A DNA stretch of 41,637 nt, taken from NCBI GenBank assembly GCA_964057225.1, contig CAXKVF010000050.1, positions 1-41,637 of the forward strand, given 5' to 3'. The notes beneath the pieces were generated by a model. That model made no database searches and had not been told where the DNA came from. It was given only the letters and a program-made list of their open reading frames with translations. Shown one piece after another: positions 12,614 to 14,609 of this stretch. Source of the DNA: Auanema rhodensis. Its lineage: Eukaryota > Animalia > Nematoda. The translations under genes were made by a program, and so were the position numbers. Position 1 is the first letter of the stretch; each line of letters begins with the position of its first letter.

Positions 12614-14609
12614 TCACGAATTATAATAATTGTCTTTAAGTAATTTGATTTTTTTTGTATCACAGTTTATATAATATGCTGTGAGATTGCTTCTGTGCTT
12701 CCCCGTATCTACTAGGGCATAATTGATATCCTCCTGGTTCTTGAATATAATGATGGACGAATTTAGAATGCTGCCGAAAATTCCCATAATCAACTGAAAT
12801 TTATTATATTCATGAATGTATTCGATGTAATGTATTTTACCTTCTTGTTGTTCACGGTTATTTCTATCTTTGGTCAGTGCTTTAACTATGTCGTATACGT
12901 TCGCCTGTGTGAGTCTTTCTCCTTTTTTTCTTATTGATCAGGTCTTTAATTTTGTTGAGTTTCTTCTTGTAGTTTGAAGTTGTGCTCAATTTATTAAATA
13001 TGTTGACCAGATCGTTCTGACTCTGAAATATATCTCAATCAGTTGTTTTATATTATTTATGATTACCTTTAGTTCTGATTTAATGTAACTTATTTCGTTC
13101 TCGAAAATGTATTGAGTTACACTTTTCCAATCCATTTCTATTCCGTTAAAATAATTCGATATTTTAAAGAAATTAGATAATTTATGAGCAGTATCTCGTT
13201 TACTCATGTCGTGGTATAGAAAACCTTTGCATGCCTGGCAATGACAACGACCTAATAAATAAAATAACAGTTGAATGTTGTATTATGTGTTGCAAACCTC
13301 GGCAAATCTGACAATGACATAGATAGAAATATGCCATGTTATCGTCTTTCATGTCATTTTTCTCTGCATATTTCCAAAAAATTTCCTGTACTTCTTCAAT
13401 ATCTTTGTCTGCTTTTAGCGCATTTTTCTAAATTATATTAATGTTTGTCTTTTGGTAATGTTATTCCGAACCTTTATTTTATTCCATCAATTTTATAGTA
13501 GCGTCATAGTGTTTGTAACTATGATTGTTCAGGGGACCTCCAAACTTATGTTTGTTGATAGCATTGGATTCTTAAAAATAGAAATGTTCAAATACAAGCA
13601 TGAAATGAAAACCTGTTGAGGAGGTGAATTTCGAAGAGACATGTCCGAATAACGTTTTTCCTCCTTTAACATATACTTTGTAGTAATCTGCTATACCATT
13701 TGGGTCATGTATACCGTTCTTATCAAATCTAGGATTCAAATTGATACAATCGGTTGTTTCATCAAGAGGCGTGAACATTATTCCAGCGCTAAATGTTTTG
13801 AGTTGTTGAAAAAGACTTTTCTAGAACTTACTTCTCCATTTTATGAACTAATTTTTTCAGTTTTTTATTGTTCATTCCGTTTGTCAGATTCAAAAATTCT
13901 GACTTTTGAAAAAACGGTTGCTCCAGAATTTCTCTTTTATTCTTTTGTTTTCTCCGCAAGTTCCTTGATAATTAACAATAAAAAATAACAAAGAAACTTA
14001 CTAAATGCCTGCTAATGTTGGAATCATATTTCCAACAAATTGGGCAAATGTCGCCTCGTCCTGCACTTGTTTGTGGAACAAACTTGATGGGGTCAATGTG
14101 CTAGACCGAATCCGAACAAATCTGAAAACGTTATGTTTAATTTTTTTTTAATTTTGACTTACTGTTTTGAATGCTTGTCATTCTACTGCCTCGCATTTTT
14201 GATCGTTCGAGGTCGATGAAACATCCAATTCCGAGTCCTCCAATCTCTTATTTAAACTAACGCCTTTAGGGAAAGATTATATAATTCTTTTTGAACGGCA
14301 GGATCAGGATGTTTGCGAACATCTGCATAAAAAAAAATGTTTTTTGGTGAAATTTTGCAAACCCACAAGATGTTTTATTTATTTCGTTTTTGATCCTTTT
14401 ATTCAAAATATGCTGCTTACGAAACGCTCGAGACGTTCAGAATCAAAGTTTTGCCTCATTAGTCGGAGAACTGAAAAAGAAAATTGAATAAATAATAAGA
14501 AGTTGATTAATAAAACAGAGATTAAAAGCAATAATGAATAACAGTTATTTTCATTCTTCGTTAACTTTTCCCGCCAAATTCGGATCGTTTCCTGTTTTTC
14601 TGTAAACAT
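12614..14609 (-). CDS. Spliced ~11-exon gene for an unknown ~510-aa protein with a candidate C2HC zinc finger (CPICWKYDSNISRHL[GTC]) and a CHCQICRGRCHCQAC cluster
   Basis: Manual GT-AG introns at 14471-14542, 14323-14366, 14122-14162, 13964-14001, 13789-13831, 13571-13612, 13428-13471, 13252-13297, 13023-13066 and 12794-12840 (nine are 38-47 bp, several with TTTCAG acceptors). They join track ORFs 14403-14609, 13572-13778 and 12986-13207. AATAAA lies about 25 bp after the stop. Several 1-bp frame corrections are required. Confidence 0.72.

What the first reader, a model, noticed from the sequence alone, without database searches (positions are those of the whole stretch)
12614..14609. Hidden intron-rich Pol II-type gene inside the element, encoding an orphan zinc-binding protein
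Seen: ten regularly sized GT-AG introns link three short track ORFs, e.g. ...KMEN|AGIMFTPLDE...FTSSTE|SNAINKH... and ...AYFYLCHCQICRG|RCHCQACKGFLYHDMSKRD...SELK|SQNDLV..., ending ...LLKDNYYNS* before an AATAAA. An earlier exon gives CPICWKYDSNISRHL, which extends to GTC (C2HC/UBZ-like spacing) with a 1-bp correction. Roughly 6-8 frame fixes are needed, mostly in homopolymers. No RT, DDE, tyrosine-recombinase or HUH motifs recognised. The C-terminal FGSILNSSIIIF is only faintly OTU-like. Inference: this is the only substantial coding capacity, so it is either a novel targeting or nuclease protein or a captured or selfish cargo gene. It is transcribed antisense to Pol I.
Basis: partly seen in the sequence, partly recalled or inferred. 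Interest (0 to 1): 0.8.

Follow-up and report, generated by a model that had tools for sequence, protein, structure and literature searches.

The report
Dead SET-domain gene remnant in rDNA element
The "hidden gene" has real exons and introns, but it is the broken, internally deleted remains of two genes that larger sister elements at the same ribosomal-DNA spot still carry whole, one of them a SET-type methyltransferase gene, so it is not a new kind of zinc-binding or DNA-cutting protein.

Summary
The window is a nematode rDNA array of 8,055-bp units. One 28S gene carries a 9.6-kb insertion (8337-17916).

**What is confirmed.** The ten GT-AG introns, the quoted peptides, the stop and the AATAAA are all there. 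Exon-by-exon conservation with diverged copies validates the reading frames (dN/dS 0 to 0.45).

**What changes.**
At least 11 other copies are identical to each other and lack them.
- The stretch holds remnants of two genes, not one:
  - a 3'-cut small ORF (E1-E3);
  - a zinc-finger/SET gene (E4-E11).
- Sister elements of 10.9, 18.9 and 22.5 kb sit at the same 28S nucleotide and carry the second gene full length.
- The copy here lacks about 2.5-2.9 kb of the gene's middle, including the SET N-terminal exon and the second His of the C2H2 finger.
- It also has a TAT>TAA nonsense codon, a 5-nt deletion, and 4-nt and 1-nt insertions.
- The "zinc-binding" CHC clusters are a post-SET motif.

**Verdict.** This is a pseudogene relic in a deleted, probably non-autonomous element with 31 left junctions among 648 28S sites. 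The scan had already found the element family on other contigs.

The parts
8337..17916 (.). 9.6-kb insertion in the 28S gene (context). The right end repeats the 18-bp target core AGACAGGTTAGTTTTACC.
   Evidence: Comparison of the inserted unit with uninserted units; junction alignment with three sister elements.
14178..14609 (-). Gene 1 remnant: exons E1 14609-14545, E2 14470-14421 and E3 14322-14178. In the majority copy this is an 87-codon ORF (MFTEKQ...HVRKHPDP...CEAVE*). It is cut short compared with the intact 4-exon homologues, which have a basic tail.
   Evidence: Homologues lie in C42 (L015:2834-3567) and C12 (L030:4095-4606). dN/dS against C8 is 0.15.
14186..14190 (-). Deletion junction 1. 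Homology to the C42-type gene 1 ends here and homology to the C31-type gene 2 begins. The gene 1 stop and the gene 2 ATG overlap (ATGA at 14181-14178).
12614..14181 (-). Gene 2 remnant (zinc finger and partial SET), exons E3b and E4 to E11.
14002..14121 (-). E4: the first half of a C2H2 finger (CPICWKYDSNISRHL).
   Evidence: 98% DNA identity to C31 (L017). 65% amino-acid identity to C42 and 54% to C12.
13964..14001 (-). Intron 4, with deletion 2 at about 13981. About 66-75 nt are missing compared with the C8 and C31 copies. The loss removes the intron's 3' part and the first ~20 codons of E5, including TKH, the second His of the finger. What remains is a cryptic CAAG acceptor.
13832..13963 (-). 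E5 (ELAEKTKELKEKFW...). The frame is open only in the majority copy; the window copy has two contig-specific 1-nt indels at 13940 and 13909.
13613..13788 (-). E6, a chimeric exon. Its first ~20 codons come from the exon after E5. The rest is SET exon A. Deletion junction 3 lies at about 13728, with TAG microhomology. The middle of the gene (2.5-2.9 kb in the relatives) and the SET-N exon are gone.
13472..13570 (-). E7, the NHS motif exon (GPLNNHSYKHYD). It carries an in-frame TAA at 13481-13479 where C8, C12 and the C31 paralog have Tyr.
13298..13427 (-). E8, with the SET C-terminal motif (EIFWKY) and the first CHCxxC cluster. There is a 5-nt deletion at about 13413 compared with the C8 and C12 copies.
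13067..13251 (-). E9, the second CHCxxC (post-SET) cluster and a family-specific extension.
   Evidence: No relatives were found among 1.84 billion proteins.
12841..13022 (-). E10, 182 nt here against 177 nt (59 codons) in both the C12 copy and the C31 paralog. It has a 4-nt insertion at 12925-12917 and a 1-nt insertion at 12868, giving two frameshifts.
12614..12793 (-). E11, the last exon (LIMGIFGSILNSS...NYYNS*). It is 46% identical to the paralog's last exon.
12584..12589 (-). AATAAA poly(A) signal.

Best explanation
The flagged stretch is the decayed coding core of a deletion derivative of a family of DNA elements. These elements all sit at one nucleotide of the 28S rRNA gene.

Full-size members (10.9, 18.9 and 22.5 kb) carry two genes, both antisense to the rRNA:
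- a small gene for an 'HPDP' protein with a basic tail;
- a long, many-intron gene for a C2H2 finger, a ~550-residue middle region and a SET domain with a post-SET Cys cluster.

In the 9.6-kb element three deletions reshaped this region:
1. One fused the third exon of the small gene to the start codon of the long gene.
2. One removed the second half of the finger.
3. One removed the whole middle region together with the SET N-terminal (AdoMet-binding) exon. It is in frame and shows TAG microhomology.

The remnant then picked up a nonsense codon, three frameshifting indels, and replacements at conserved SET motif positions.

Shown: the exon structure, the homology, the deletions, the lesions and the copy numbers.

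Inferred:
- The remnant makes no working methyltransferase.
- The 9.6-kb element therefore does not depend on this gene.
- It persists either by help in trans from an intact relative or simply by unequal exchange and homogenisation within the rDNA array.
For: **Same insertion point and shared 18-bp core in four element sizes**.

**Colinear full-length genes in the sister elements:**
- C31:97.6-102.3 kb, C42:92.0-95.4 kb and C12:47.4-51.8 kb.
- They carry 2.5-2.9 kb between the E6 5' part and SET exon A that is absent here.
- The SET-N exon (GVFAKTSLKQGQGITGYYG) is present in C12 just upstream of the breakpoint.

**SET identity:**
- The C42 exon scores 23.6 bits against PF00856, above the cut-off.
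- The six-frame genome scan places C31, C12 and C42 loci among its 43 hits.
- The C12 copy gives E 0.019 as its only hit.
- The window exon aligns to the C42 exon at E 7e-9.

**Real coding history:**
- 9 synonymous and 0 non-synonymous changes against C31.
- dN/dS 0.26 against C12.
- dN/dS 0.15 for gene 1 against C8.

**Derived lesions:**
- TAA where three relatives have Tyr.
- A 5-nt deletion against two relatives.
- E10 is 182 nt here against 177 nt in two relatives.
- I>N and N>D replacements at the NHS..PN motif.
- The lesions are identical in at least 11 error-free copies and in the variant copy on C10.

**Gene 1 is truncated** compared with the 4-exon homologues.

**No other conserved exons** were found in the element.

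**Copy number:** 31 left junctions of this type among 648 28S sites.
Against: - No expression data are available, so splicing and translation are untested.
- The 87-codon gene 1 ORF is intact in the majority copy. A 184-residue product from the gene 2 ATG to the TAA is possible.
- A downstream AG (GCAG|AC) could compensate for the 5-nt deletion in E8.
- The window's own exons do not reach any Pfam threshold.
- The SET assignment for this copy rests on homology to relatives. I did not search or fold the joined model.
- The missing middle region could not be confirmed as a tyrosine recombinase. 'Lost its mobility enzyme' is therefore an inference.
- The subterminal palindromes differ between element types, which argues against simple mobilisation in trans by the sister elements that are assembled.
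Confidence: 0.8

Rival explanations
1. The remnant still works in a reduced form. One option is the 87-residue gene 1 product. Another is a truncated finger-less half-SET protein. A third is its antisense transcript. Any of these could regulate the family, much as truncated transposases repress their parents, or could feed small-RNA silencing.
For: - The gene 1 ORF is open and canonically spliced in the majority copy.
- There are 31 junctions, with copies essentially identical.
- dN/dS is below 1 along the paths to the relatives.
Against: - dN/dS cannot be assigned to this lineage alone.
- Gene 1 lacks the conserved basic tail.
- Gene 2 has no trans-splice acceptor or promoter of its own after deletion 1. 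It also lost the SET-N exon and the finger's second His, and it stops in E7.
- The identity of the copies is equally well explained by rDNA homogenisation.
Confidence: 0.12
2. The lesions are assembly errors, and the element encodes an intact mini zinc-finger/SET protein.
For: This contig and several others show many 1-nt indels against the majority copy, so the assembly is noisy in rDNA contigs.
Against: - The nonsense change is a substitution.
- The 5-nt deletion is not in a homopolymer.
- All the lesions are shared by at least 11 otherwise identical copies and by a copy that differs by 5 substitutions.
- Even without them, the SET-N exon and half of the finger are missing.
Confidence: 0.05
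3. The ORF pieces and introns are chance features of AT-rich DNA.
For: The individual exons are short (17-61 codons) and give no Pfam hit.
Against: - Exon-by-exon conservation at 45-61% amino-acid identity, with conserved intron positions.
- 9 of 9 substitutions against C31 are synonymous.
- The gene is colinear across four element types.
Confidence: 0.01

Closest known systems
SET-domain protein lysine methyltransferases (Pfam PF00856) with a post-SET Cys cluster
   Same: The NHS...(P)N motif, the E-x-F-W-x-Y C-terminal motif with the Tyr, and the following CxCxxC clusters. The homologous exon of the sister element passes the Pfam cut-off.
   Different: - This copy lacks the SET N-terminal GxG exon.
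- It has I>N and N>D changes in the NHS motif, a stop and frameshifts.
- The family's SET sits at the end of a transposon-borne fusion gene. Its ~180-residue C-terminal extension has no detectable relatives.
The 10.9-, 18.9- and 22.5-kb 28S-specific elements of the same genome
   Same: The identical insertion nucleotide, the 18-bp core repeat, the orientation, the gene order (small HPDP gene, then the finger/SET gene), 280-bp repeats and a GC-rich 26-nt motif.
   Different: The element here is shorter. Both genes are truncated or deleted and broken. It has its own subterminal palindrome (GGTAT-N6-ATACC). It is the commonest type, with 31 junctions.
Non-autonomous deletion derivatives of DNA transposons (for example Ds of Ac, or P-element KP)
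   Same: Internal deletions remove the enzyme-coding middle while the ends are kept, and the copy number is higher than that of full-length relatives. (This comparison rests on general knowledge.)
   Different: Mobility of any member is unproven. The enzyme of the family is not identified. The copies lie in a tandem array, which can amplify them without transposition.
rDNA-specific mobile elements (R1, R2 and R4 retrotransposons; Pokey in Daphnia; Starships that target 5S rDNA in fungi)
   Same: Strict site specificity for a conserved rRNA gene position, with occupation of a minority of units. (This comparison rests on general knowledge; Starships appear in PMC13004909.)
   Different: - No reverse transcriptase, piggyBac transposase or confirmed Captain-type recombinase.
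- A different site (28S domain V region).
- Spliced host-type genes, including a SET domain.

Membership tests
SET domain (PF00856) | A match to the family profile at or above the curated cut-off. | tested here: inconclusive
   - Window exons: no hit.
- 93%-identical intact copy on C12: 15.8-17.0 bits, below the 22.4 cut-off but the only or top hit.
- Homologous exon of the C42 element: 23.6 bits, above the cut-off.
- The window exon aligns to that exon at E 7e-9.
- The joined model was not searched.
SET domain (PF00856) | The N-terminal GxG / 'G-x-G-V-F-A ... Y-x-G' AdoMet-binding strand region. | tested here: not met
   It is present as a separate exon in C12 (L014:2490-2577), C31 and C42. 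It is deleted in the window gene; the breakpoint at about 13728 lies exactly at the 5' edge of the next exon.
SET domain (PF00856) | The NHSC-x-PN motif and the ELxF/YDY motif with the catalytic Tyr. | tested here: inconclusive
   Read directly from the sequence: NNHSYKHYD and EIFWKY are present. The hydrophobic residue before NHS and the Asn of 'PN' are replaced compared with three relatives. A stop lies between the two motifs.
Post-SET Cys cluster | A CxCx2-4C cluster directly after the SET C-terminal motif. | tested here: met
   CHCQIC and CHCQAC lie at the E8/E9 boundary and are conserved in C31 and C42.
C2H2 zinc finger | Two Cys and two His at canonical spacing. | tested here: not met
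   Relatives have C-x2-C-x9-H-x3-H split by an intron. In all rDNA copies of this element the exon part holding the second His is deleted.
28S-specific element family of this genome | The same insertion nucleotide and a shared core repeat. | tested here: met
28S-specific element family of this genome | A full-length finger/middle/SET gene. | tested here: not met
   The middle 2.5-2.9 kb is absent.
Tyrosine recombinase (PF00589) | A match to the catalytic-domain profile (R..H-x-x-R..Y). | tested here: not met
   The six-frame genome scan returned 31 candidates; it hit other elements and none in rDNA contigs. Exon-wise Pfam on the middle regions of C31 and C42 gave nothing. Only motif-like strings were seen. 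The window gene lacks that region altogether.
OTU-like cysteine protease | A match to an OTU profile, or a Cys/His catalytic pair. | tested here: not met
   No OTU family appeared for the last exon of the window, the C12 copy or the paralog.

The most novel reading that the evidence does not exclude
The dead mini-gene may be kept because it acts against its own family. Its spliced antisense transcript, or a truncated finger-less half-SET product, might dampen the full-size elements or mark inserted rDNA units for silencing. The roughly two-fold excess of third-codon-position divergence over intron divergence might then be the trace of an exon-targeted small-RNA arms race.
Probability: 0.08. 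Interest if true: 0.7.

Novelty: new variant of a known kind. Interest (0 to 1): 0.35.

Why it matters
The result removes a false lead, an 'orphan nuclease or targeting protein', and replaces it with a concrete genealogy. The commonest rDNA insertion of this nematode is a stripped-down, gene-dead derivative of larger elements that encode a zinc-finger/SET fusion.

That matters in two ways:
- Anyone testing how this undescribed family of 28S-specific DNA elements moves should take the full-length genes on C12, C31 and C42, not this copy.
- The 9.6-kb type gives a natural test of whether such elements spread by an enzyme supplied in trans or merely by rDNA array dynamics.

Tried and rejected
- **Exon-wise Pfam scans.** Scans of the window, C31, C12 and C42 exons mostly gave nothing. 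Only the C42 and C12 SET C-terminal exons scored.
- **PF00589 six-frame scan of the genome.** It found other recombinase elements but none in the rDNA contigs.
- **Profile search with exon E9.** Searching 1.84 billion proteins gave only repeat-protein artefacts, so the C-terminal extension has no detectable relatives.
- **Two literature searches.** Neither found a description of such elements.
- **Readings rejected:**
  - the C2HC/UBZ reading of the finger;
  - the OTU-like reading of the last exon;
  - the single-gene model;
  - a 17-nt mini-intron in E3;
  - a stop-free path from E3 into E4 in one frame.
- **First Rfam call.** It failed and I repeated it on a sub-range.
- **Joined spliced protein model.** All database searches were exon by exon, by reference.
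- **Human sequence.** None of the contigs looked human.

Full report
**Setting.** The window holds eukaryotic rRNA genes on the plus strand: 18S at 2905-4649, 5.8S at 4916-5067 and 28S from 5272.
- The units are 8,055 bp long.
- Compared with the uninserted units, the first unit carries an insertion from 8337 to 17916.
- The insertion is flanked by a repeat of about 18-20 bp of 28S sequence.
- Bases 1-278 of the window are the right end of a further copy.
- Earlier notes of this scan call the organism a roundworm. I did not identify it further.

**The observation.**
- Three-frame reading of the minus strand shows the quoted peptides, the stop at 12616-12614 and AATAAA at 12589-12584.
- A search of the window's own genome found about 30 near-identical copies of the 2.2-kb stretch, all on rDNA contigs, plus diverged copies.
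- Eleven fetched copies are identical to each other. They differ from the window copy by 11 gap openings and no substitutions.
- Six of those events lie inside the gene, at 14544, 14425, 14277, 14096, 13940 and 13909.
- Other small contigs show the same kind of indel-only noise. I therefore take these as errors of this contig and built the model on the majority copy.
- The model has 11 exons and 10 GT-AG introns of 74, 98, 41, 38, 43, 42, 44, 46, 44 and 47 nt.

**It is, or was, coding.**
- A paralog on C31 and C12 matches exon by exon at 45-61% amino-acid identity. Its intron positions are the same and its intron sequences are unrelated.
- Against closer copies the substitutions are biased to synonymous sites:

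| Compared with | Exons | Result |
|---|---|---|
| C31 | E4-E6 | 9 synonymous, 0 non-synonymous |
| C12 | E6-E11 | dN/dS 0.26 |
| C8 relic | E1-E3 | dN/dS 0.15 |
| C8 relic | E4-E8 | dN/dS 0.45 |

- Chance ORFs are excluded.

**Two genes, not one.**
- In the C42 and C12 elements the homologues of E1-E3 continue into a further exon. That exon encodes a basic tail, followed by a stop and a poly(A) signal. They form a small gene of their own.
- In the window element, homology to that gene ends at 14190. Homology to the C31 long gene begins at 14186, just upstream of its ATG.
- The small ORF's TGA and the long gene's ATG overlap at 14181-14178.
- The majority copy therefore has an 87-codon truncated ORF, followed directly by the second gene without an acceptor of its own.

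**The second gene is a deleted finger/SET gene.** Three sister elements occupy exactly the same 28S position and share the core repeat:

| Contig | Coordinates | Size |
|---|---|---|
| C42 | 85420-96365 | 10.9 kb |
| C31 | 89349-108285 | 18.9 kb |
| C12 | 35160-57716 | 22.5 kb |

- Each carries a long gene that is colinear with E4-E11. Each has 2.5-2.9 kb more sequence between the first ~20 codons of E6 and the rest of E6.
- E6 is thus a fusion exon. The right breakpoint (about 13728) lies at the 5' edge of SET exon A, and there is TAG microhomology.
- The exon just upstream in the relatives encodes the SET N-terminal motif (GVFAKTSLKQGQGITGYYG in C12). That exon is lost here.
- The 5' part (E4 to the start of E6) is 96-98% identical in DNA to the C31 gene. 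The 3' part is 93% identical to the C12 gene. The family is mosaic.

**Domain identity.**
- Pfam on single exons of the window gave nothing.
- The homologous C42 exon (KAIKDIKKGEELFWSYGD...CPCERCKG) matches SET at 23.6 bits, above the cut-off.
- A six-frame scan of the 181-Mb genome with PF00856 lists the C31, C12 and C42 loci among its 43 hits.
- The intact C12 exon scores 15.8 bits, and SET is its only hit.
- The window exon aligns to the C42 exon at E 7e-9.
- The CHCQIC/CHCQAC clusters that looked 'zinc-binding' are a post-SET cluster.
- The finger in the relatives is C-x2-C-x9-H-x3-H, split by an intron.
- I could not confirm that the missing middle region is a tyrosine recombinase. There were no PF00589 hits in the genome scan or exon by exon.

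**Lesions of the rDNA copies.** These are derived changes, compared with the C8 and C12 copies and the paralogs:
- A deletion of about 66-75 nt at 13981 removes the second His of the finger.
- TAT has become TAA at 13481-13479.
- There is a 5-nt deletion at about 13413.
- E10 is 182 nt here against 177 nt in both relatives. The cause is a 4-nt insertion at 12925-12917 and a 1-nt insertion at 12868.
- Conserved positions of the NHS..PN motif are replaced.
- All of these are shared by a copy on C10 that differs by 5 substitutions.
- The longest product from the gene 2 ATG would be about 184 residues, without a complete finger or a complete SET domain.

**Rest of the element and copy number.**
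- Translated comparison of 8337-12620 with the sister elements shows only repeat-level DNA similarity and no conserved exons.
- The assembly holds 648 copies of the 28S target. Of these, 31 carry this element's left junction.
- Each element type has its own subterminal palindrome. Cross-mobilisation by the assembled relatives is therefore not obvious, and array dynamics may suffice to explain the copies.

**Relatives elsewhere.**
- A profile of exon E9 searched against 1.84 billion proteins returned only repeat-protein artefacts.
- Two literature searches found no description of such elements.

**Limits.**
- There are no expression data.
- The element family had already been noted by this scan on other contigs. 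I re-tested the shared insertion site and the SET domain, and I did not confirm the recombinase.

Noticed in passing
window 10097-10122, 12249-12274, 12476-12501 (minus strand): An exact 26-nt GC-rich motif (GGGGGTGCGGGGGCGGCTAGCCCCCG) occurs three times in the element. None is expected by chance. In the relatives it sits at rearrangement junctions: it cuts an HPDP exon at L030 ~4800, and it lies just before the join between the 93% copy and the truncated paralog on C12.
   Followed up: partly
window 8350-8420 and 17520-17800; C31, C12 and C42 junctions: Each element type has its own subterminal palindrome array: GGTAT-N6-ATACC here, GTATCC-N4-GGATAC in C31 and C12, and GTTAC-N6-GTAAC in C42. 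All types share the 18-bp 28S core at the right end.
   Followed up: partly
exons against introns of 12614-14609, compared with L013, L014, L015 and L017: Third-codon-position divergence (81/771) is about twice the non-coding divergence (68/1210). dS of 0.15-0.5 exceeds intron divergence of 0.03-0.08. Constraint on the tiny introns explains only part of this. The rest is unexplained.
   Followed up: partly
L015:2834-3567 (C42) and L030:4095-4606 (C12): An intact small gene of this element family encodes a protein with an 'HPDP' motif and a Lys/Arg-rich tail. The C12 version has a Cys-rich N-terminus. It gave no Pfam match and its function is unknown.
   Followed up: partly
G000:C8:4410000-4438000 (L036, L013, L037): A chromosome-scale contig holds a decayed relic: rDNA fragments, the 280-bp repeats, and a 90-92% copy of the same deleted gene pair with extra stop codons. 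The deletion derivative is therefore old.
   Followed up: partly
G000:C8:6742-69868 and C8:10.97-11.86 Mb: The 28S target sequence recurs at spacings of 8,394 bp and 6,567 bp on C8. The genome therefore has rDNA arrays with unit lengths other than the window's 8,055 bp.
   Followed up: no
L014:3329-3505 (C12 copy of exon E10): There is a weak Pfam hit to the phage-integrase N-terminal SAM-like domain (E 0.027, 15.2 bits). It lies C-terminal to the SET domain and is probably chance.
   Followed up: no
window 1-278: The window starts inside the right end of another copy of the same insertion.
   Followed up: yes
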